64,000 bases of DNA, from IMG/VR virus record IMGVR_UViG_3300045051_000720, positions 124,001-188,000 of that record. One strand, 5' to 3'. The notes under the pieces were generated by a model that did no database searches, was not told the DNA's origin, and saw only the letters and a list, made by a program, of their open reading frames with translations. The translations under genes were made by a program, and so were the position numbers. This document shows, piece by piece, positions 48 to 52,302 of this stretch (positions are counted from its first letter, which is position 1; every line of letters begins with the position of its first letter).

Positions 48-1448
48 ATGAGTAAGTCCCAGCCCAACCGTTACGATCAAGACACTGTCGCGCAGTTGCG
101 CACTCACCTCAAGGACTGCGAGAGCATCAGCGATGCGCTGACCGCTCTCCAAGAGCGCCTTCAGATCACGCGCGACCACGCGCAGCGCCTCAATCGCCAG
201 TACGCTTTCTGGGGCCGTGCCGAGGGGACCAAGGGTTACGACACCCCCCCACAAACCCCCAACGAAGAGCCCGAGAACGAGGCCGATCTACCCGGCGCGC
301 CGGGGACCCACGTGTCCTTCAAGGGTGACACGGGTGTCATCGATCTCGTGTCCGAGATGCCCAAGACGCTGGATGAGCTGCTCGCTGCCTGTCAAGTCGA
401 TCCTGAGATCTGGGAGGTCGAGCGGTACGTGTGCAATCAGTGGCAGATGGGCCGCAAAGACAAGCGGGTCAACCTCACGTGGAGAGAGGGCGTCGCTACG
501 GGTTTTGTCGACGACTCGGGCAAGATTGCCCGCGCGCCGCTGTGGCAGGTGAAGGCGTGGTTGCGGCGCAAGGTCGAGAAGACCACCCTCAACCTGATGC
601 TGGAGCAGTTCGCCCTAAAGGCGGCCAAACACGCGCCGCGCAAGTGGGTGTTCGAGCGACCCAAGCGCGCGAAAGGCGACTGTTGTTATGTGCTCAACGG
701 GCAGGACCTGCACCTCGCGAAGCTGGCGTGGTCACCAGAGACGGGCGGGGCGGACTGGGACATCAACATCGCGCGCAAGGTGGACGACGCTGCCGTCGAG
801 GATCTGATGGGTAAGGTGCCTATCGAGCGCATCGACGAGGTGATTGTGATCGTCGGCTCGGACCTCCTTCAGGTGGACAACGACAAGAGCACCACCACGG
901 CGGGGACGTATGTCGATTCCGACTCGCGCCTCGCCAAGGTCTACAATGTGGCCTGCGACATGCTCACGGCGCGCATCGAGCGGCTCGCCTCGCGTTTCAA
1001 GGTCAAGGCTATAGTCATCCCCGGCAACCACGATTCGACTGTGTCCTTCTTCCTCGGTCGCTATCTCGCGGCGTGGTTCCGTACCCACCCCAATGTTGAG
1101 GTGGACTCGCGTCCCCTCAGCCGCAAGTACCACGGGTTCGGCAAGACCCTTTTGACGTTTGACCACGGCGACGAGACCAAGATCAAGGACCTCCCGCTCA
1201 TCATCATGCGCGAGAATCAGGCGACTATCAGTCAGTACCGCTTCATGGAGGCCTTGACGGGCCACCTCCACCACGAGGAGAGCAACGACATCAAGGGTAT
1301 CGTGTTGCGCGTCGCGCCCGCGTTGTGCGCGGCTGACAAGTGGCACGCGCGCAAGGGTCTGGTTGGCTCGATTCGGCGTTCGCAAGGGTTGCTCTATCAG
1401 CGCGAGAACGGGCTGGAGGCCATCTACTATTCAACTCCCCTCGACTAA
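48..1448 (+). CDS. Calcineurin-like metallophosphoesterase with long N-terminal extension
   Basis: Motifs DLH, GSDLLQVD, PGNHD, DHGD, GHLHH in the order expected for this family. Confidence 0.8.
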   Translation: MSKSQPNRYDQDTVAQLRTHLKDCESISDALTALQERLQITRDHAQRLNRQYAFWGRAEGTKGYDTPPQTPNEEPENEADLPGAPGTHVSFKGDTGVIDLVSEMPKTLDELLAACQVDPEIWEVERYVCNQWQMGRKDKRVNLTWREGVATGFVDDSGKIARAPLWQVKAWLRRKVEKTTLNLMLEQFALKAAKHAPRKWVFERPKRAKGDCCYVLNGQDLHLAKLAWSPETGGADWDINIARKVDDAAVEDLMGKVPIERIDEVIVIVGSDLLQVDNDKSTTTAGTYVDSDSRLAKVYNVACDMLTARIERLASRFKVKAIVIPGNHDSTVSFFLGRYLAAWFRTHPNVEVDSRPLSRKYHGFGKTLLTFDHGDETKIKDLPLIIMRENQATISQYRFMEALTGHLHHEESNDIKGIVLRVAPALCAADKWHARKGLVGSIRRSQGLLYQRENGLEAIYYSTPLD

Positions 1449-7009: not shown

Positions 7010-8506
7010 ATGCGCTCTTATCCCAATGCCGCCGCAGCCCGCGCGGCCTGTATAAATCGTGGTGACGCCCAGTGGTTGCTCCCTATCGAGGGACGCCAAC
7101 CAGTCACGCTCATCGCCAACGACGAGATTTTTGTCGGGTTCGATGACAAGGTGTTCGAGCAGATCGTGAACGCCGCCGAGATGCCGGGCGCAGAGCGGGT
7201 AGTCATTGGGGCTGACGCGCACGTTGGCTTTGGCATCTGTGTGGGTACGACCGTGGTGTCGGAGACGCATGTTTATCCTCCCGTCGTGGGACCGGATGCA
7301 TGTTGTTCCCTCGCATTCCTCCAAACCGACCTGCCTGAGGATGCTATCAAGGACAAAACCGCGCGTCGTGCGCTCATCAATGCCATCACGGCGCGTATTC
7401 CCACGGGACTCGGCAATCGTCAAGCACCCAAGGCGCGCACGCTCAACCTTGAGGTACTGGTGTCAGTGGTTTGCGGAGGAGCGAGCGGGAACAATCTCCG
7501 CCTGTTAGGTATCCCCGAGGAGTGGGCGACTAAGTGCGAGCGGGCGGTCTATGGTCCTTCATTCGCGCGCCTGTCTGACCGCTTGCACGTCATCACCTGC
7601 GAACGCCCCGAGCTGTTACCTAAGTTGTTGGCTTTGGCGAGCTTAGGGGCCGGCAACCATTTTCTCAGCGGCGACATTGTGGACCTTGGCCGCATTGCCG
7701 GTACGCAAGGTCTCCCTGACGAGTTTGGTCTGCGTCAGGGTTGCTTCGGCTCGCTGTCGCATTGCGGGTCCAGAGGGTTTGGGTTTCAGTTGATGGCCTA
7801 TCATGAGCGCAAACTCAAGGCTCATTTTGAGCGGTGGGGCATTCCGTTTACAGGCGGCGATCACCACCTCATCTGCGCGCCCGTCGACACTCCTGAGGCG
7901 CGTGACTACATGCTCGACCTCGCGCTCGCGGCCAACTTCGCAGTCGTTAACCATCTCCTCATCCAAACCTATGTGTTGGAGGCCGTGCAGGAGGTTTTCC
8001 CCGGCGCGCGGGGCGACTTAGTCTATCACATCAGCCACAACGTGGGTCAACAAGAGGTCCTTGACGGACGACTCAAGTGGGTGTTCCGCAAGGGTGCGAC
8101 GCGGGCTTTCCCGGCAAACCATCCGGGGCTCAAGGGTTCTATCTATGAACGGATCGGTCATCCCATCCTACTGCCCGGCAACGCGCGCGATGGTAGTCTC
8201 ATCATGGTGGCACGACAGGGTGCCAAGACCGCCTCGTTTTCGGTCAACCACGGGGCCGGTAGATCGTTGGGGCGCAAAGAGGCTAAGCGGCGGTTGGTTC
8301 AGAAGGAGGTCGACCAAAATCTGCTTGACTCCGACGTAATGCACAATGGGCGGACTTACCCACTCGACGAGGCCCCGGGCGCCTACAAGGACTTCGATGA
8401 GGTCACGAGAAGCGTTGTGGCAGCAGGCCTTGCTACGGCTGTTGCGCGACTGACGCCGCGATTCGTTATCAAGGACTGTGATCCGTCACCGGAGGGCGCG
8501 GCATGA
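7010..8506 (+). CDS. rtcB: RtcB-family RNA ligase
   Basis: DAHVG, VGPDACC, LGAGNHF, HCGSRGFG, HNV, RKGAT, PGN, NHGAGR, EAPGAYKD. Confidence 0.93.
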   Translation: MRSYPNAAAARAACINRGDAQWLLPIEGRQPVTLIANDEIFVGFDDKVFEQIVNAAEMPGAERVVIGADAHVGFGICVGTTVVSETHVYPPVVGPDACCSLAFLQTDLPEDAIKDKTARRALINAITARIPTGLGNRQAPKARTLNLEVLVSVVCGGASGNNLRLLGIPEEWATKCERAVYGPSFARLSDRLHVITCERPELLPKLLALASLGAGNHFLSGDIVDLGRIAGTQGLPDEFGLRQGCFGSLSHCGSRGFGFQLMAYHERKLKAHFERWGIPFTGGDHHLICAPVDTPEARDYMLDLALAANFAVVNHLLIQTYVLEAVQEVFPGARGDLVYHISHNVGQQEVLDGRLKWVFRKGATRAFPANHPGLKGSIYERIGHPILLPGNARDGSLIMVARQGAKTASFSVNHGAGRSLGRKEAKRRLVQKEVDQNLLDSDVMHNGRTYPLDEAPGAYKDFDEVTRSVVAAGLATAVARLTPRFVIKDCDPSPEGAA

Positions 8507-12710: not shown

Positions 12711-13682
12711 ATGCCACGCAAACGTGAGCGTTTTATCAAATGTGTTTACCTCGTCGGGTTCAAAGGTACACACAAGGTGTACATCGGGTCTAGCACACGT
12801 TGGCCATACCGGGCACGCGAACATCGCACAAATTTGCGTTTGGGTAAGCATCATAACGTCTATCTTCAACGCGCATATGCCGTCTACGGTCCTGAGGTAT
12901 GGGTTGAGGAATTAGAGCGTTTTGACGATGTGATAGCGATGCGCTACGGCGAACAAAAATGGATGGCTTTCTACCATAGTGACGACTCGAACTACGGTTA
13001 CAATCTTGTCCCAGAGGTAGTCAAATTCGGGACCTGTGGTTATCAATATACCCAAGCACAACGCACCGCGATGAGTCAGAAAAACAAAGAGAGGATGCAA
13101 GATTCAAAGGCTCGCCAAAAGGTGGCTAGTGGAGTTGCTCGCGTGTGGCGATACCAACCAGAGGTTTATCTTCAGAATCGAGTCGCGGCCAAAGAGTATG
13201 ATCTTTACGATCCGGAGGGATGCCGCGTGCATATCTGTGATCTTGGTCGATTTTGTCGAGAGCGCGGCTTGGTTTACGAAAAAATGTATAAGGTCGCTTC
13301 GGGGGTACGGATTGAATATGAAGGGTGGAAGCTGTATCCTGACCGTAAGAACAAGGTGAAGAAACCTTATGCGCTTATTAGCCCGTGGGGCGAGCGTTTT
13401 GAGGGCGTCGGGCTGCGCGCGTTCGCACTAAAGATGGGTTTACATCCTCGTACTATCGCCCTCGTCGTTCAAAAGCGAGTTAAGACGCACAAAGGATGGC
13501 GATGCGCTGACGTATCCGCCGATTGCGCTTTGGCCCATAAGGGACGCGACTATACGCTTATTGGTCCGTCAGGTGAGGAGATTCGTATCAATAACCTCAC
13601 GGCCTATTGCCGTAAGCACGGTTTATCATATGATATTATTCGCCACGGTGGACTGTCCCGGGGGTGGAAACGTAAAGAATGA
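12711..13682 (+). CDS. GIY-YIG homing endonuclease with three C-terminal DNA-binding repeats
   Basis: VYLVGFKGTHKVYIGSS..R..H, GYNL; three Y.L..P.G..L..FC...GL..GW repeats; looks AT-richer than flanks. Confidence 0.9.
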   Translation: MPRKRERFIKCVYLVGFKGTHKVYIGSSTRWPYRAREHRTNLRLGKHHNVYLQRAYAVYGPEVWVEELERFDDVIAMRYGEQKWMAFYHSDDSNYGYNLVPEVVKFGTCGYQYTQAQRTAMSQKNKERMQDSKARQKVASGVARVWRYQPEVYLQNRVAAKEYDLYDPEGCRVHICDLGRFCRERGLVYEKMYKVASGVRIEYEGWKLYPDRKNKVKKPYALISPWGERFEGVGLRAFALKMGLHPRTIALVVQKRVKTHKGWRCADVSADCALAHKGRDYTLIGPSGEEIRINNLTAYCRKHGLSYDIIRHGGLSRGWKRKE

Positions 13683-34339: not shown

Positions 34340-36109
34340 TTGAAGACTCTCATCTACCGCTTCCGACTTGCTCCTAGCGTGCATCAATGTGCCATGATTG
34401 AGGCGAGTAACACACAACTGTGTCGGGTATGGAATGCTTTAGTAGGTGCCACCAAGCACGCCGAGCACGAATGCAAGCATGGACGCAAGACTTGCGTGGT
34501 CAAGCGATTAACTGATTTGCTGACCCAGAAGAAAGTCGTCGGGATGCGCGCGGCTGCCGTGAAAAAGCTGGCAGAATCCAAAGCAATATCATTAACGGAT
34601 GCCAACAATCTTCTCACCCGCGAGCAGGTCGCCCGTGAGAGTCGCACGATTGTGCGCAAGAATGGAACCAAAGCGCGACGGTGTTCTATTCGTAAGCTGG
34701 CGTTGGCCTATGCCATTGCTACGGTAGGTCATCAGATCAACCGCTTCGGAGTGGAATCCGCCGCGTTTTGGGGAGTGATTGAAAAATTCAAAACCTCTAC
34801 CGCCGACTATCCATTGGGCAAACGGGGTGCGCCCCGATTCAAACGAGTGGGTGATAACGTGTCCATGCAGGCTCAGACCAAGAATCAACACGTCAAGGAG
34901 GGGGTCGTTGACCTATCGCGTTTAGTCGGTTCTAGTTGTTCCTGTGTCCACATGATTCAACACCGCCCGATTCCAGACGGCGCGATTGTCAAGCAGATGG
35001 CCGTGGTTAAGCAAAATGACCGGCTGTTTGTGGCCATCTTTGTTGATGTGCCAGATGCGGCGGCGCAAAAGAGTTTAATGGCAGCTAGTGGAGCGACGGC
35101 TGGTATTGATCCCGGCCGTAAGACGGCAGTGTCGCTCAGTTCTACAGACGGAACAATCCAACAGGTTGTCTCGCCCCCACTCTTGCGGGACAAACGGTTC
35201 ATGCGTCGCACGGCGCGGTTGGCACGCAAGTTGGACAGGCAACGCCGCTTTGCCAATCCAGACCGCTACAATGAGGATGGCACCTTCAAGCGCGGAGCGC
35301 GCGGTGTGTGGGTGACAACCAAGGGAATGACTAAGACCCAAAAGCGTGCGAACGATTTGCGTCGCCGTCTTGTGGATGTACGCACAGAGCACTATCGTCT
35401 CAAAGCGCGCGAAGTGTTGAATCAGTTTGACCACGTTGGGATCGGTACATGGCGGCCCAAGGGTGCGCCGGGTGAAGGACAAGCCAAACGCGCACAGTTG
35501 CGCAAGGACGCAGATAACGCTTTGGGTCAATTCGCGGGTATCCTTCGGGACTATGCTGCGCGCAATGTGACCCCCAAGAAGATCTACGATATCAATGAGG
35601 TCAACACCACCCGTCGTTGCATCAATTGTGGCGAGATGACGGGGCCGAGTGGGTTGTCCAACCTTGGGGTGCGCGAGTGGACGTGTTCCCACTGTGGTGC
35701 CCACCATCAGAGAGACTTTGCTAGTGCGCGAGCTATCGCTCTGCGCACTCAAATCGTGGCCGATACGCATTTGGTTAACGATGGTCCAACGACCAAAATT
35801 CAGCCTGTTCGTTATGCCGCAAAGCGTAACAAACGAAGTGGGTTGGTGGCGACACCAATCAATGTGCCCGTGGAACAGGAAGCGGAGGCCGCGAGGTCCC
35901 GTCTGAGTAAAAACGGTGCTCGTGCGAGTGCCCCAGTGGTAGACCATCCGGCCGATTGCACTCGCGTGCGAAAAGCCAATGCTGACGAAGGCTCTAGCAA
36001 TATCCTCGCGTCAGAGCCAGCTACCAATGCCTGCAAAGGTAACCATCGCTCGCATAGTTGCGCCGTAGAACTTGAGTCCACGGTAGTTGTGGAGGAACAC
36101 TCACTATGA
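34340..36109 (+). CDS. tnpB: Large TnpB/Cas12f-like protein with rearranged RuvC
   Basis: YRFRLAP..CRVWNALV; AGIDPGRK (RuvC-I); HVGIGTW where IED is expected; INEVNTTRRCINCG; WTCSHCG.HHQRD..SARAI; then about 110 aa of low-complexity tail. Confidence 0.85.
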   Translation: MKTLIYRFRLAPSVHQCAMIEASNTQLCRVWNALVGATKHAEHECKHGRKTCVVKRLTDLLTQKKVVGMRAAAVKKLAESKAISLTDANNLLTREQVARESRTIVRKNGTKARRCSIRKLALAYAIATVGHQINRFGVESAAFWGVIEKFKTSTADYPLGKRGAPRFKRVGDNVSMQAQTKNQHVKEGVVDLSRLVGSSCSCVHMIQHRPIPDGAIVKQMAVVKQNDRLFVAIFVDVPDAAAQKSLMAASGATAGIDPGRKTAVSLSSTDGTIQQVVSPPLLRDKRFMRRTARLARKLDRQRRFANPDRYNEDGTFKRGARGVWVTTKGMTKTQKRANDLRRRLVDVRTEHYRLKAREVLNQFDHVGIGTWRPKGAPGEGQAKRAQLRKDADNALGQFAGILRDYAARNVTPKKIYDINEVNTTRRCINCGEMTGPSGLSNLGVREWTCSHCGAHHQRDFASARAIALRTQIVADTHLVNDGPTTKIQPVRYAAKRNKRSGLVATPINVPVEQEAEAARSRLSKNGARASAPVVDHPADCTRVRKANADEGSSNILASEPATNACKGNHRSHSCAVELESTVVVEEHSL

Positions 36110-41282: not shown

Positions 41283-41945
41283 ATGAACGCTACATCCCCA
41301 ATCGCCACTGGCGATCTGAAGACGGACGGCAACTCGCCGCTCTCGACCGTACCCACCAACATCGATCAACGCCTCGCCGAGATCGAAACCGAACGCGCGC
41401 GGCTCGTCGCGCTTGATGAAGAAAAGAACCGTCTGCTTCGCGAGAAGGAGATCGCGCTGGCCAAGCGGCGGCAGGAGACCCTCGCCACGTTGCCCGGCCT
41501 GTTGCAGGTTGGGTCGCTCAATGAGGTGCTCGATCTGATCCGCAACAGCGGAACGGTGCGGCCCGCCGCTTCGCGCACGAGTGGCGCCCGTATCCCCGAA
41601 TCGACGCGCGCACAGGCCCGTCAGATGCTCGAAGCCGGTACGCCCGTCAACAAGGTCGCAAAGGCCTTGCGTATCGGCGAGGCCACGGTGTGGCTCTGGA
41701 AACGGAGCTGGGGTCTGACCAAGACCCGCACCGTGAAGGCCGCCAAGACCAAACCCGCCAAACGGCGCAACGCCCAGCCCGGCGCGCTGAGTGAAACCGA
41801 GCACGATCGGCTGATCGCGGAGCTGAAGGAGGGCAAGGTGCCCGTGGCGAAGCTGGCGAAGCAGTATCGCAGGTCGAGGGCGCGTATATATCAGATAGCC
41901 AACCACTTAGGCATCCCGACGCCCAGCCTGCGTCACGCCGCCTAG
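41283..41945 (+). CDS. H-NS-like coiled-coil plus two HTH DNA-binding protein
   Basis: N-terminal coiled coil, LPGLLQVGSLNEVL, RIPESTRAQARQMLEAG..VAKALRIGEATV, K/A-rich linker, second HTH. Confidence 0.6.
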   Translation: MNATSPIATGDLKTDGNSPLSTVPTNIDQRLAEIETERARLVALDEEKNRLLREKEIALAKRRQETLATLPGLLQVGSLNEVLDLIRNSGTVRPAASRTSGARIPESTRAQARQMLEAGTPVNKVAKALRIGEATVWLWKRSWGLTKTRTVKAAKTKPAKRRNAQPGALSETEHDRLIAELKEGKVPVAKLAKQYRRSRARIYQIANHLGIPTPSLRHAA

Positions 41946-47829: not shown

Positions 47830-47875
47830 TTTTCGACATCCAACGACAGGCCTTTTCGACATCCAACGACAGGCC
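47830..47875. repeat. 23-bp perfect tandem duplication
   Basis: TTTTCGACATCCAACGACAGGCC twice. Confidence 0.9.
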
Positions 47876-49559: not shown

Positions 49560-49598
49560 CCCTATTGCGCGCGCCGCGCGGTGTGTTACCATCCGACC

Positions 49599-50144
49599 AT
49601 GAAGACCATCACCCTTCATCGCCTCAAGACCATCCTTGAGAACCTGACCCACGCCACGCCCGTGGGTGTCATCGCTTTGACCACCGCGGACTGCCGCGCC
49701 AAGGGGCCAACCGGCCCCAACCCATGGGGCAAGGATGGCGTCAAGAAACTGACTCGGCTTAACGCTATGATCGGCACGGACCACGAGCTGTCCATCCAGC
49801 GCCAACAGGCCCGCGAGGGTCAGGAAGCCGATTTCCTCGCTGCGCCGCGCTCATGGGGCGTTCGGATCGGACCGGGGTTGGTTGAGCATAGGGGGCAGTA
49901 CTATTTGCCTCTCCAACTCAGTCCCGTCAACGCGGTGCGTCCATTATACTTGGTCCCCCGAGAACGCGGGGCCAAGACCATCCTCACCGCCGTACCCAAG
50001 GAAATCGTTGCACCGTGGTTATCACCCGCGCGGGATGAGCGTGTCTATCAGGGGGTAGTCCGACCGGTAGTTAGGCGCGATCTAAGGCTTGACAGTATCG
50101 TTAGCATCACTCTTGGCGGGGAGAAGTATCGCATTAGATCTTGA
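49599..50144 (+). CDS. Hypothetical phage protein
   Basis: Promoter-like TTGCGC..TACCAT upstream; typical composition. Confidence 0.7.
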   Translation: MKTITLHRLKTILENLTHATPVGVIALTTADCRAKGPTGPNPWGKDGVKKLTRLNAMIGTDHELSIQRQQAREGQEADFLAAPRSWGVRIGPGLVEHRGQYYLPLQLSPVNAVRPLYLVPRERGAKTILTAVPKEIVAPWLSPARDERVYQGVVRPVVRRDLRLDSIVSITLGGEKYRIRS

Positions 50145-50169
50145 CACTAGGCATCGTTTGGCAACACTT
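50141..50169 (+). promoter_or_regulatory. Promoter upstream of the pentamer array
   Basis: TTGACA at 50141; weak -10 (AACACT/ACACTT) ends 3-4 nt before the first repeat. Confidence 0.55.
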
Positions 50170-50172
50170 AAA

Positions 50173-50569
50173 GGCGGGGCTTGGCAGGGCTGGGCACGGC
50201 GGGGCACGGTTAGGCAAGTGTAAGGCAAGGAACGCGGTTCGGTATGGCAACGCGGGGCGACGCCGGGTTTGGCCGGGCGTGGCCGGGCGCGGCGAGGTTG
50301 GGTTAGGCATGGAACATGGTGTGGTGAGGCTGGGTATGGCGGGGCATGAGTAGGGCGAGGAACATGGTAGGGCAAGGCTGGGCGCGGCTGAGCAGGGTCA
50401 GGTCCGGTACGGCTAGGCTCGGTTAGGCAAGGTCCGGGGCAGCGCGAGGTGTGGCACGGCTTGGCTGGGCAACGCACGGCCGGGTCCGGCGAGGCAAGGA
50501 ACGAGGTGAGGTGGGGCAGGGCAGCGCGCGGCGTGGTCAGGCAGGGCTTGGCAGGGCAACGCAAGGTCC
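50173..50569 (+). repeat. GGY-NN pentamer array, putative guide RNAs (VIPR-like)
   Basis: Parsed by hand: 63 GGY-NN plus 7 CGC/AGC-NN pentamers, five 7-nt GGAAC/GGTCC-NN separators and two 6-mers, total 397 nt. Confidence 0.92.
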
Positions 50570-50602
50570 GAGGCGCGACGGTCTATCCGCGCACAATTTC
50601 TC

Positions 50603-50631
50603 TTGACAGTAGGCTCTAACATCACTACCTT
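50603..50631 (+). promoter_or_regulatory. Promoter of the RAMP-like gene
   Basis: TTGACA-17-TACCTT; gives a leader of about 70 nt, unlike most promoters here. Confidence 0.7.
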
Positions 50632-50709
50632 CACATTATCTCCAATAGGCACCTACGCTCAGACAATCACGTCAACGAGCATCACTCGTGACCGAACGAG
50701 ACAACGCAC

Positions 50710-51372
50710 ATGCAAAAGTATAATATCGCACTCGTTGGGGCAAATCCGCTCCTTCTTCATCACGACAACATCTCGTGGGCTGGGCTCATGAACGAATGGA
50801 ATACGGACCCCGCGAACAAAGCCAAGTCCGTCGCGGGCGACGACCGCACTCCCGCTCACCGTTGGATTGGTTGTCTATACCACGAGGGTGGTCGTCTCAT
50901 CGTCCCCAGCGATAACCTCATGACTATGCTGCGTGAGGGTGGCGCGCGATGTCCGACTGGAAAGAAAGGCGCGACGTTCAAACGTCAGACCCAATCCGGG
51001 CTGGTTGTCGACCAGAGCGGATGGTCCTTGACTGTTGATGGCAAGGAAATCCCCTATGATCCTATTGCCAAGCTTATCGACGAGCCCGACTTCACCAAGC
51101 ACGAGAAGACGGTAGCGAAGATGGGTTTTGCGCTGTTTGTTAAACGCGCCCGTGTCAACCAGACCAAACATGTCCGTGTGCGTCCTCGGTTCGACCGTTG
51201 GGAGGCGGCGGGCTCCATTACCGTGTTCGACGATACTATCACTGACCGCGTACTCGAAGACATCCTCAAGTTTGGAGGTCGTTACGCCGGTCTTGGCGAT
51301 TGGCGTCCATCATCCCCGAAATCCCCCGGACCATTCGGAACCTTCACGGTGACCGTTTCCCCCGCATCATGA
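50710..51372 (+). CDS. RAMP/Cas7-like RNA-binding protein (Vipr-like)
   Basis: N-terminal IALVGANPLLLH strand; RVRPRFDRWE..ITV; C-terminal Gly-rich loop GGRYAGLGDWRP..GPFGTFTV; next to the pentamer array. Confidence 0.75.
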   Translation: MQKYNIALVGANPLLLHHDNISWAGLMNEWNTDPANKAKSVAGDDRTPAHRWIGCLYHEGGRLIVPSDNLMTMLREGGARCPTGKKGATFKRQTQSGLVVDQSGWSLTVDGKEIPYDPIAKLIDEPDFTKHEKTVAKMGFALFVKRARVNQTKHVRVRPRFDRWEAAGSITVFDDTITDRVLEDILKFGGRYAGLGDWRPSSPKSPGPFGTFTVTVSPAS

Positions 51373-51842
51373 GCGCAACAACCAAACTCTTCGGCGGCGG
51401 CGTTCCTACTCAACCCGAGGTTGAAAGCCTGATCAAACGATTTGGTGTTCCTGCGGTAGGGACATCGATTCTCTATGTCGATATTGCGGCTACCATTGGA
51501 CATCCTGTTCGTAGCAATCGCTATCTCGCTGTAGTATCAAGGTGGCGTAAACGTCTGTTCCAGCAGCATAATCTATTGCTGGACCCTATTCATGGTGAAT
51601 CCTATACGGTCTGTAACAACAGCCAACGTATTTCCCACAGCACTGGCAAGTACAAAAGCGGCCTTCGGCATATTCGACGTGCGTCCGAAGTAGCTGCTCG
51701 GACCGACACAGAAGGATTGCTTCCCGACGAGATGCGGGCTCGCGACCATATCGTCAAGACCGGTAATGCTTTGCAGCTAGCGGCGGCCACTGCCGCACGG
51801 CAACTCAAATATGTTGCGCCGGGGCTACCTCAGTCAACGTGA
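51369..51842 (+). CDS. Partner protein coupled to the RAMP-like gene, possible winged helix
   Basis: ATGA overlap; same atypical codon style; VGTSILY..IA..G..RY..VVSRWRKRL..L..G.SY. Confidence 0.65.
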   Translation: MSATTKLFGGGVPTQPEVESLIKRFGVPAVGTSILYVDIAATIGHPVRSNRYLAVVSRWRKRLFQQHNLLLDPIHGESYTVCNNSQRISHSTGKYKSGLRHIRRASEVAARTDTEGLLPDEMRARDHIVKTGNALQLAAATAARQLKYVAPGLPQST

Positions 51843-51864
51843 AGATGTCACGTACCGTTTTACC

Positions 51865-52302
51865 ATGACCATCGTTGACACCTCCACCCGCCTCCCCACC
51901 ACCCCCGGACCCTACGCGGTTCTGGTCAAACCCGCACAGGGCTACCACCGCGCCATTGAGACCGGCGTGAGCTGGGATGGGTCATGGAAAGGGACCGATG
52001 ATCCCGTCGTCGCGTGGGTTGACACCGCCGCGCGCGTTGCCGTTGTGCCTTCTCCGACTCAGGCGGTTGAACCCTCATCCTATTCCCTCACCCTCGTGGG
52101 CTTCGATCCTACCAGCAAGATCGGCGTGATCAAGCTCGTGCGCGAGCTGACGGGGCTCGGGTTGGCTGAATCCAAAGCGACGGTCGAGGCCCTTGCGATC
52201 AAACCCCTCATGATCAAGGAGAATGCTTCTCGCGCCGAGGTAACCGCACTGGACACCCGTCTGCGCGCGGCGGGTGGGGTGACCAAACTGGAGGCCGTAT
52301 GA
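51865..52302 (+). CDS. Ribosomal protein bL12 (L7/L12) C-terminal domain fused to a phage N-terminal domain
   Basis: YSLTLVG..KIGVIKLVRELTGLGLAESKATVE..P.MIKENASRAE..L.AAGG. Confidence 0.88.
   Translation: MTIVDTSTRLPTTPGPYAVLVKPAQGYHRAIETGVSWDGSWKGTDDPVVAWVDTAARVAVVPSPTQAVEPSSYSLTLVGFDPTSKIGVIKLVRELTGLGLAESKATVEALAIKPLMIKENASRAEVTALDTRLRAAGGVTKLEAV

What the first reader, a model, noticed from the sequence alone, without database searches (positions are those of the whole stretch)
50141..51842. GGY-NN pentamer array beside a RAMP/Cas7-like gene: candidate RNA-guided system with a gapped code
Seen: 397 nt (50173-50569) parse almost fully into 5-nt units with a constant GGC/GGT (sometimes CGC/AGC) and a variable dinucleotide. 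The array has its own TTGACA promoter and sits directly upstream, on the same strand, of a 220-aa gene with a RAMP-like first strand (GANPLLLH) and a Cas7-like Gly-rich loop (GLGDWRP..GPFGTF). A partner gene is coupled to it, and both genes look codon-atypical, as if acquired together. Known: RAMP/Cas7 proteins polymerise along guide RNAs with a fixed nucleotide period. Inference: the constant GGY binds each subunit and the NN pairs spell a non-contiguous DNA target, giving a phage a programmable silencer against rival phages or the host. From memory this fits the recently reported VIPR systems (target read as NN-x-NN-x); that link should be verified.
Basis: partly seen in the sequence, partly recalled or inferred. 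Interest (0 to 1): 0.95.

Follow-up and report, generated by a model that had tools for sequence, protein, structure and literature searches.

The report
VIPR guide-RNA locus in a large phage
This is a genuine VIPR locus, a recently described phage system in which a Cas7-like protein and GGY-NN repeat RNAs are thought to silence rival DNA; it is a new example of a known kind, not a new kind.

Summary
Positions 50173-50569 are the only strongly 5-nt-periodic tract in the 64-kb window. They parse completely into 63 perfect GGYNN units, 7 near-units, 2 irregular units, 2 single bases and five 7-nt marks (four are GGAACNN).

The 220-aa gene downstream is a Vipr protein. It matches solved SUSP1 Vipr by sequence (E 2.8e-5 alone, 1.1e-11 as a family profile) and models as a Cas7/Csm3-like fold. 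It keeps the residues that hold the two G's and the Y in the SUSP1 structure. The coupled 157-aa gene is a distant Vap1 homologue, with a winged-helix-like domain and two long helices.

In 80 of 80 related IMG/VR loci the vipr gene lies next to such tracts. GGYNN runs number 428 on the vipr strand and 4 on the other. NN positions change 4-7 times faster than GG positions.

This clade differs from the characterised SUSP1 type. Its array is contiguous, has no structured tails, and is divided by 7-nt GGAACNN marks.

No natural target was found, because only exact-match scans were possible. Transcription, RNP formation and silencing are inferred by homology. The promoter claim is only partly supported.

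The parts
50088..50097 (+). First CTTGACAGTA box. It is followed by CATCACT and GGCGGGG and lies inside the 3' end of ORF 49581-50144. It looks like a duplicated promoter/leader stub.
50140..50149 (+). Second box, CTTGACACTA, 24 nt upstream of the array. It is the candidate array promoter (-35-like), but no canonical -10 follows.
50173..50569 (+). vrRNA array: 397 nt of GGY-NN pentamers in six segments.
50173..50217 (+). Guide segment v1: 9 perfect units. NN series: GG TT AG TG AC GG AC TA AA. It is followed by the irregular stretch G-TGTAA-GGCAA (50218-50228).
50229..50235 (+). 7-nt punctuation mark GGAACGC.
50236..50310 (+). Guide segment v2: 15 units, of which 2 are CGC near-units.
50311..50317 (+). 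7-nt punctuation mark GGAACAT.
50318..50347 (+). Guide segment v3: 6 perfect units. It is followed by the irregular stretch G-AGTAG-GGCGA (50348-50358).
50359..50365 (+). 7-nt punctuation mark GGAACAT.
50366..50440 (+). Guide segment v4: 15 units, including 1 AGC and 1 terminal GGG near-unit.
50441..50447 (+). Degenerate 7-nt mark AGCGCGA. This is my parse; the alternative reading is a bare 2-nt register shift at 50436-50437.
50448..50497 (+). Guide segment v5: 10 units, including 1 CGC near-unit.
50498..50504 (+). 7-nt punctuation mark GGAACGA.
50505..50569 (+). Guide segment v6: 13 units, including 2 CGC near-units. It is the last segment and has no terminal GGAAC mark.
50573..50592 (+). Weak hairpin after the array (GCGCG ... 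CGCGC). It folds no better than shuffled sequence, so it is not a convincing tail or terminator.
50602..50611 (+). Third CTTGACAGTA box, ~100 nt upstream of vipr. It is the candidate promoter of vipr-vap.
50710..51372 (+). vipr: a 220-aa RAMP/Cas7-fold protein. H17, R158, D197, W198 and R199 align with the GGY-contact residues of SUSP1 Vipr.
51369..51842 (+). vap: a 157-aa Vap1-like accessory protein with a winged-helix-like N-terminal domain and two long helices. Its ATG overlaps the vipr stop codon.

Best explanation
The locus 50088-51842 is a VIPR (Viral Interference Programmable Repeat) system carried by a 219-kb phage contig. What follows is the proposed mechanism, by homology with SUSP1 VIPR.

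1. The 397-nt array is transcribed on the + strand, probably from the TTGACA box at 50141.
2. Vipr protomers bind the RNA one per pentamer. H17 and D197 read G1, R158 and W198 hold G2, and R199 with helix 1 (D68/N69) forms the pyrimidine pocket for Y3. The NN dinucleotides are left exposed on a helical filament.
3. The 7-nt GGAACNN marks have a purine where the pocket needs a pyrimidine, and they shift the register by 2 nt. They therefore divide the transcript into six guides of 6-15 units, either as filament breaks or as processing sites.
4. Each guide pairs with double-stranded DNA by the NN-x-NN-x rule (1-nt skip), specifying 12-30 bases.
5. No nuclease is present. Together with the winged-helix Vap1-like partner, the complex most likely blocks transcription of a competing mobile element (rival phage, prophage or satellite) rather than cutting it.

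Shown here: the array format, Vipr homology, the fold, conserved contact residues, Vap1 homology, conserved linkage, and strand bias and NN hypervariability across relatives.

Inferred: transcription, RNP assembly, the role of the marks, the skip rule in this clade, silencing, and the target class.
For: Vipr identity:
- phmmer hit to PDB 36pp 'SUSP1 Vipr protein', E 2.8e-5. The family profile gives E 1.1e-11.
- hhalign to the phage wV8 Vipr gives 98.7% probability, E 2e-16, over 188 columns.
- Full-length match to phrog_4652, E 3e-16.
- AF2 model with pLDDT 86. All 50 listed Foldseek PDB hits are CRISPR effector-complex entries (mainly type VII, type III-A Csm and standalone Csm3), best E 9e-6.

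Contact residues: SUSP1 H17, R138, D177, W178 and R179 (paper 10.64898/2026.04.26.720927) align to H17, R158, D197, W198 and R199. All five are invariant in 24 relatives.

Array: unique 5-nt periodicity. All GGYNN runs are on the + strand, against 0.24 expected.

Relatives:
- 80 of 80 IMG/VR loci have periodic tracts beside vipr.
- 428 runs lie on the vipr strand and 4 on the other.
- 112 inter-run gaps are exactly 7 nt, mostly GGAACNN.
- NN entropy is 3.88 of 4 bits.
- Substitution frequency is 0.38-0.42 at NN, 0.05-0.07 at GG and 0.09 in flanks.

Vap:
- A homologue is adjacent in 69 of the other 79 loci.
- hhalign to wV8 gp095 (Vap1 position) gives 93.6%, E 2e-7.
- Foldseek BFVD hits include proteins of Gordonia phage Trine and Felixounavirus adrianh.

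Context: the window belongs to a viral contig and encodes phage replication genes. There is no CRISPR array, no Rfam family and no nuclease domain in vap.

Literature: a GGY>GGA change abolishes silencing in SUSP1 (fig. S12 legend). This supports GGAAC acting as a break.
Against: - No natural target was found. Exact 1-nt-skip scans of IMG/VR, JGI metagenomes and GTDB genomes gave nothing for sub-patterns of v2, v4, v5 and v6. v1 gave a single chance-level hit.
- 162 guides of this clade scored no better with skip 1 than with skips 0, 2 or 3 against the 1.29 Mb of DNA held.
- No canonical -10 follows the TTGACA boxes.
- There is no structured 3' tail like that of type II vrRNAs.
- The SUSP1 K33 backbone contact has no clear equivalent in the weakly aligned N-terminal bundle.
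- Vap similarity to solved DNA-binding winged-helix proteins is weak (E >= 0.035).
- Expression and binding are untested.
Confidence: 0.92

Rival explanations
1. It is a VIPR system used for the phage's own gene regulation or host takeover. The guides would target the phage's own genome outside this window, or host genes, rather than rival mobile elements.
For: No rival-element target was found. About 155 kb of the 219-kb contig could not be read: the look-up of the flanks returned no DNA. The locus sits among early/replication genes.
Against: There is no match above control skip rules inside the 64-kb window. Two guide sub-patterns had no exact match in 185,579 species genomes. The published systems show no self-targeting, and their targets are satellites and prophages.
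Confidence: 0.1
2. It is a decaying or inactive VIPR locus. The array has accumulated degenerate units and irregular junctions and no longer yields working guides.
For: The array has 7 near-units, 2 irregular units, one degenerate mark and no terminal mark after v6. No target was found.
Against: Both ORFs are intact and translationally coupled. All GGY-contact residues are kept. 63 of 72 units are perfect. The VIPR paper reports frequent internal degeneracy in working vrRNAs, and related loci show the same kind of single-base variants.
Confidence: 0.07
3. The tract is not a guide array but a G-rich repeat with another role. Candidates are a coding repeat (a 160-aa ORF is open on the - strand at 50082-50564), a G-quadruplex or regulatory element, or a slippage-prone microsatellite.
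For: ORFs are open across the tract on both strands. The tract is 70% GC and G-rich.
Against: A 5-nt period with 7-nt register shifts is incompatible with a reading frame. Variation among relatives falls on two of every five positions, not on codon third positions. The tract keeps its strand relative to vipr in 428 of 432 runs across 80 loci. TRF finds no true microsatellite.
Confidence: 0.01
4. It is a fragment of a CRISPR-Cas system (a stray Cas7) or a TIGR-Tas-like system.
For: The best structural matches are Cas7/Csm3 subunits.
Against: The window has no CRISPR repeats. The two proteins give no Pfam, NCBIfam or PADLOC cas hits. Identity to Cas7 is only 9-15%, whereas SUSP1 Vipr is detectable by sequence. 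The 5-nt repeat has no spacer-repeat structure.
Confidence: 0.01

Closest known systems
Type II VIPR of Escherichia phage SUSP1 and other Felixounavirus phages such as wV8 (bioRxiv 10.64898/2026.04.26.720920, .720927 and 2026.10.15.759431; PDB 36pp)
   Same: - It is a two-gene vipr-vap module in a phage.
- The Vipr proteins are homologous, with the same GGY-contact residues.
- The Vap is Vap1-like.
- GGY-NN pentamer guides lie on the gene strand, in segments of 6-15 units against 9-16 reported.
- NN positions are hypervariable.
- No nuclease is present.
   Different: - Vipr identity is only ~23%, and there is a 7-residue insertion after GDWRP in the G-loop.
- SUSP1-type vrRNAs are separate ~100-nt units, each with a repeated leader and a ~60-nt structured tail (on wV8). 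This array is contiguous and tail-less, and is divided by 7-nt GGAACNN marks.
- The array lies only upstream of vipr.
- Y is C in ~78% of units, whereas it is mostly T in wV8.
- The host phage is a 219-kb contig with 60% GC.
'Staggered' vrRNA arrays mentioned for other VIPR types (fig. S18 of 10.64898/2026.04.26.720920)
   Same: Both are contiguous arrays in which the end of one vrRNA abuts the start of the next, without long tails. The 2-nt register shift at each mark would make successive guides 'staggered'.
   Different: Only the legend is held, not the figure. It speaks of 1-nt overlaps and does not mention a GGAACNN motif, so I could not establish that the two are the same.
Class 1 CRISPR Cas7 backbones (type III Csm3, type VII Cas7)
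   Same: They share the RRM core, thumb and glycine-rich loop, and one subunit binds per fixed RNA period with periodic base flipping. They are the top structural matches.
   Different: - The period is 5 nt with three bases sequestered, against a 6-nt period with one base flipped.
- There are no repeat-spacer array, cas genes or adaptation module.
- The target code is gapped.
- The system is encoded by a phage.

Membership tests
VIPR system | A Vipr protein: a RAMP homologue (RRM core, G-loop, thumb) related to the characterised Vipr. | tested here: met
   PDB 36pp SUSP1 Vipr, E 2.8e-5 (single sequence) and 1.1e-11 (profile). hhalign to wV8 Vipr 98.7%. AF2 pLDDT 86 with Cas7/Csm3 top fold hits.
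VIPR system | Residues that sequester GGY: SUSP1 H17, R138, D177, W178, R179. | tested here: met
   They align to H17, R158, D197, W198 and R199, all invariant in 24 relatives. The Y-pocket residues E71/M72 align to D68/N69. The equivalent of K33 is unresolved.
VIPR system | An adjacent tandem GGYNN (YNNGG) repeat tract of at least 4 units, on the gene strand. | tested here: met
   63 perfect units in six segments at 50173-50569 on the + strand. It is unique in the window.
VIPR system | GGY conserved and NN hypervariable among related loci. | tested here: met
   NN entropy is 3.88 of 4 bits. Substitution frequency is 0.38-0.42 at NN, 0.05-0.07 at GG and 0.09 in flanks.
VIPR system | A minimal locus with a vap accessory gene, and no cas genes or CRISPR array. 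| tested here: met
   A coupled 157-aa gene is conserved beside vipr in 69 of the other 79 loci. It is homologous to the Vap1-position gene of wV8 (93.6%). There are no CRISPR-like repeats and no cas or defence HMM hits.
VIPR system | Viral or proviral genomic context. | tested here: met
   IMG/VR contig of 219,464 bp. Phage DNA polymerase, helicase, primase and exonuclease in the window.
VIPR system | vrRNAs are expressed and co-purify with Vipr, and the RNP binds dsDNA by the 1-nt skip rule and represses transcription. | not testable with these tools
   This needs sRNA-seq, pull-down, binding and reporter assays.
VIPR system | Natural targets in competing mobile elements, at 80% or more NN match under the 1-nt skip rule. 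| tested here: inconclusive
   Only exact-pattern scans were possible. They gave 0 hits for v2, v4, v5 and v6 sub-patterns and 1 chance-level hit for v1. There is no signal in the DNA held.
VIPR type II (SUSP1 / P. fulva clades) | Each vrRNA ends in an invariant structured 3' tail (a pseudoknot in the SUSP1 clade). | tested here: not met
   No repeated tail is present in the window, only 7-nt marks. wV8 shows ~60-nt repeated tails in the same analysis. Folding energies are no better than shuffles.
VIPR type II (SUSP1 / P. fulva clades) | A vap1-family DNA-binding accessory protein. | tested here: met
   hhalign 93.6% to wV8 and 86% to the LESphi2 neighbour gene. BFVD fold hits include the Trine and adrianh proteins. 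The model has a winged-helix-like topology. PDB fold hits are weak.
VIPR type II (SUSP1 / P. fulva clades) | Placement in the type II clade of the published Vipr phylogeny. | not testable with these tools
   The type labels (fig. 5A, fig. S16, data S4) are not held as text.
CRISPR-Cas class 1 (Cas7) | A repeat-spacer array and associated cas genes. | tested here: not met
   No such repeats are present. There are no cas family hits.

The most novel reading that the evidence does not exclude
The tail-less array divided by 7-nt GGAACNN marks is shared by most close relatives: 112 of the inter-run gaps are exactly 7 nt. It may be a vrRNA biogenesis or phasing mode not yet described. In it, a purine at the Y position plus a 2-nt register shift would end one Vipr filament and start the next, replacing the structured tail that caps type II guides. 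This would be a minimal 'repeat' that punctuates guides, arguably closer to a CRISPR repeat-spacer logic than the SUSP1 layout is.
Probability: 0.3. Interest if true: 0.5.

Novelty: new member of a known kind. Interest (0 to 1): 0.35.

Why it matters
The finding shows that a VIPR locus can be recognised from raw sequence alone. It also adds a well-resolved example from a 219-kb, 60%-GC environmental phage, far from the enterobacterial and Pseudomonas models.

The clade it belongs to has more than 1,600 detectable homologues, and arrays were linked to vipr in all 80 loci examined. It offers many natural guides in a compact, tail-less format. If the 7-nt GGAACNN mark is enough to delimit guides, that would simplify multiplexed VIPR arrays for programmable silencing. 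It would also bear on how guide boundaries evolved before CRISPR repeats. The general mechanism itself is already published, so the gain is incremental.

Tried and rejected
- Second Vipr: the other 220-aa ORF in the window (41283-41945) is unrelated.
- Curated libraries: Pfam, NCBIfam and PADLOC give no hits for vipr or vap.
- RNA families: no Rfam family in the window, so it is not a hammerhead-interspersed array.
- TRF does not detect the array, because 40% of its positions vary.
- Sigma-70 promoter scan: the TTGACA boxes are not called, and the terminator-like sites found are not at the array end.
- RNA folding of the leader, tail and last segment is no better than shuffles.
- A search for a conserved 3' tail motif across loci found only one other locus sharing GGTCTATCC.
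- Self-targeting and targeting of related VIPR loci: no signal above the control skip rules.
- Exact NNx scans: seven of IMG/VR, two of JGI metagenomes and two of GTDB genomes. All were empty except one v1 match in L081 (11901-11926, - strand). That match straddles the stop codon of an unannotated 314-aa ORF and is out of codon register. No other guide hits that contig. With 18 specified bases it is at about the chance level for a collection of this size (my estimate).
- Empty-site test: the flanking L7/L12-like gene has no other relative in IMG/VR.
- Walking along the source contig returned gene calls but no DNA.
- VIPR type: the papers' supplementary tables are not held, so the type could not be read off.
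Full report
**1. The observation**

The tract 50173-50569 has a real 5-nt period. Base autocorrelation is 0.53 at lag 5 and 0.51 at lag 10, against 0.21-0.34 at lags that are not multiples of 5. A sliding scan of the whole 64-kb window finds sustained periodicity only at 50121-50600, with scores up to 0.62 on a background of -0.02 +/- 0.09. All nine runs of four or more GGYNN units lie here on the + strand. There are none on the - strand or elsewhere, and shuffles give 0.24.

A register-aware parse accounts for every one of the 397 bases:
- 63 perfect GGY-NN units
- 7 near-units (5 CGC, 1 AGC, 1 GGG)
- 2 irregular units and 2 extra G's
- five 7-nt marks: GGAACGC, GGAACAT, GGAACAT, a degenerate AGCGCGA, and GGAACGA

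The marks cut the array into six segments of 9, 15, 6, 15, 10 and 13 units.

**2. The protein**

ORF 50710-51372 (220 aa) has no Pfam, NCBIfam or PADLOC match. The positive evidence is as follows.
- It matches phrog_4652 over its full length, E 3e-16.
- It matches the solved 'SUSP1 Vipr protein' (PDB 36pp) directly, E 2.8e-5.
- A profile of 24 relatives raises that match to E 1.1e-11.
- hhalign to the Vipr of the SUSP1-family phage wV8 gives 98.7% probability over 188 columns.
- The AlphaFold model (pLDDT 86, pTM 0.82) has as its top 50 PDB neighbours only CRISPR effector-complex entries, mainly type VII, type III-A Csm and standalone Csm3. The best E-value is 9e-6.

The structure paper (10.64898/2026.04.26.720927) names the residues that hold the GGY motif: H17 and D177 for G1, R138 and W178 for G2, and R179 with E71/M72 for Y3. 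In the alignments these fall on H17, D197, R158, W198, R199 and D68/N69 of this protein. The first five are invariant in the family alignment. The K33 backbone contact has no clear counterpart in the poorly aligned N-terminal bundle.

**3. The partner gene**

The ATG at 51369 overlaps the vipr stop codon (ATGA). The 157-aa product has no family hit. However, a homologue lies beside vipr in 69 of the other 79 loci, whereas the genes flanking the pair in this window are not conserved there.

Its model (pLDDT 92) has a helix-strand-helix-helix-hairpin domain followed by two long helices. PDB fold hits are weak (E >= 0.035) but are mostly winged-helix DNA binders. In BFVD it matches proteins of Gordonia phage Trine, a phage that also carries a Vipr homologue, and of Felixounavirus adrianh.

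A profile of 36 homologues aligns to the gene just downstream of vipr in wV8, the Vap1 position, at 93.6% probability and E 2e-7. It aligns to the equivalent gene of Pseudomonas phage LESphi2 at 86%. I call it Vap1-like.

**4. Relatives**

The Vipr protein has 1,629 detectable homologues in the large protein collection. A scan of IMG/VR returned 80 loci at 48-67% identity, and showed that the window is positions 124001-188000 of IMGVR_UViG_3300045051_000720, a contig of 219,464 bp.

- Every one of the 80 loci has 5-nt-periodic tracts directly upstream of vipr, directly downstream of it, or after vap.
- Runs of four or more GGYNN units number 428 on the vipr strand and 4 on the other.
- Gaps between runs are 7 nt in 112 cases, mostly GGAACNN, and arrays in the closest loci are bracketed by the mark on both sides.
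- Over 3,106 distinct units, Y is C in 89% and NN entropy is 3.88 of 4 bits.
- In alignments between related loci, the substitution frequency is 0.38-0.42 at the two N positions, 0.05-0.07 at the G's and 0.09 outside the arrays.

**5. Context**

The window encodes a phage DNA polymerase, DnaB-like helicase, primase, exonuclease, RtcB, a homing endonuclease and a transposase-like protein, nearly all on the + strand. There are no tRNAs, Rfam families or CRISPR-like repeats.

The motif CTTGACANTA occurs three times in the window, all in this locus (50088, 50140, 50602), against 0.16 expected. Two copies precede the array and one precedes vipr. None has a canonical -10, and the sigma-70 scan does not call them, so promoter function is plausible but unproven.

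GC3 is lower in vipr (0.62) and vap (0.49) than in most neighbours (0.58-0.83). That is a weak hint of separate ancestry.

**6. What is known**

VIPR is described in three preprints held in the library. According to these papers:
- The locus consists of Vipr, a vap gene and vrRNAs of 9-16 GGY/NN repeats.
- One protomer binds per repeat.
- dsDNA is read as NN-x-NN-x.
- The outcome is transcriptional repression of satellites and prophages.
- There are seven types with varied array layouts.
- Vap1 is needed in natural SUSP1 infection.

**7. Differences from the characterised type**

In wV8, each vrRNA is a separate unit with a repeated leader and a ~60-nt tail. In this window the same analysis finds no tail, only the 7-nt marks. 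The RNA folds no better than shuffled sequence.

A GGY>GGA change abolishes silencing in SUSP1 (fig. S12 legend), and the Y pocket excludes purines. From this I infer that GGAAC stops the filament in register and so delimits guides. This layout may be what the first paper calls 'staggered arrays' (fig. S18). Only the legend is available, so identity is open.

**8. Targets**

Under the 1-nt skip rule, no guide matches the window or the 80 loci better than under skips of 0, 2 or 3. Nor do 162 guides from the whole clade against the 1.29 Mb of DNA held.

The collection scans accept exact patterns only. Sub-patterns of v2, v4, v5 and v6 with 20-22 specified bases gave nothing in IMG/VR, JGI metagenomes or GTDB genomes. 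v1, with 18 specified bases, gave one match, in L081. That match straddles a stop codon, is out of codon register, and is not accompanied by other guides. I treat it as chance. The target class is thus inferred from the published systems, not shown.

**9. Verdict**

This is a genuine, apparently intact VIPR locus. I put the confidence at about 0.92. It is a new member of a known kind. The mechanism is assigned by homology and conserved contact residues. The one feature that might be undescribed is the tail-less array punctuated by GGAACNN marks.

Noticed in passing
window 50088-50097, 50140-50149, 50602-50611: CTTGACANTA occurs only three times in 64 kb, all in the VIPR locus (0.16 expected). 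Each copy is followed 11-16 nt later by CA(T/A)CACT. The first copy, together with the GGCGGGG that follows it, looks like a duplicated promoter/leader stub inside the end of ORF 49581-50144. These could be locus-specific promoters or operator sites, for example for the winged-helix Vap.
   Followed up: partly
window 51811-52302 (+): A 163-aa ORF overlaps the last 32 nt of vap and carries a ribosomal protein L7/L12 C-terminal domain (PF00542, E 5e-14). This is an unusual domain for a phage gene. IMG/VR holds no other relative.
   Followed up: partly
window 50161, 50246, 50468, 50555: GGCAAC(G/A)C recurs four times. The degenerate in-frame units of this array are almost all CGC after GGCA(A/G), whereas related loci use TGC, GCC, GTC or AGC. 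It may be a variant of the GGAAC mark with an inserted C that preserves the register.
   Followed up: partly
window 50218-50228 and 50348-50358: Segments v1 and v3 both end with the same irregular motif before the GGAAC mark: G + (T/A)GTA(A/G) + GGC(A/G)A.
   Followed up: no
window 47830-47875: A perfect tandem duplication of a 23-nt unit (TTTTCGACATCCAACGACAGGCC) lies in an intergenic stretch.
   Followed up: no
window 34340-36109 (+) and 12711-13682 (+): A transposase-like gene (phrog_506, E 1e-34) and an HNH homing-endonuclease gene sit inside the phage replication region. There is also an RtcB RNA ligase at 7010-8506.
   Followed up: no
L082 (phage wV8) 2259-2316 and 3652-3709: The 'DR_4' repeat regions annotated in the 2009 wV8 record coincide with the conserved vrRNA tails of the SUSP1-type VIPR locus. 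They were annotated long before the system was recognised.
   Followed up: partly
window 48-1448 region; Logan SRR24010766: The same exonuclease protein, with the same neighbouring genes, occurs on a 32-kb contig of an independent sequencing run. The phage, or a near-identical one, has therefore been sampled more than once.
   Followed up: no
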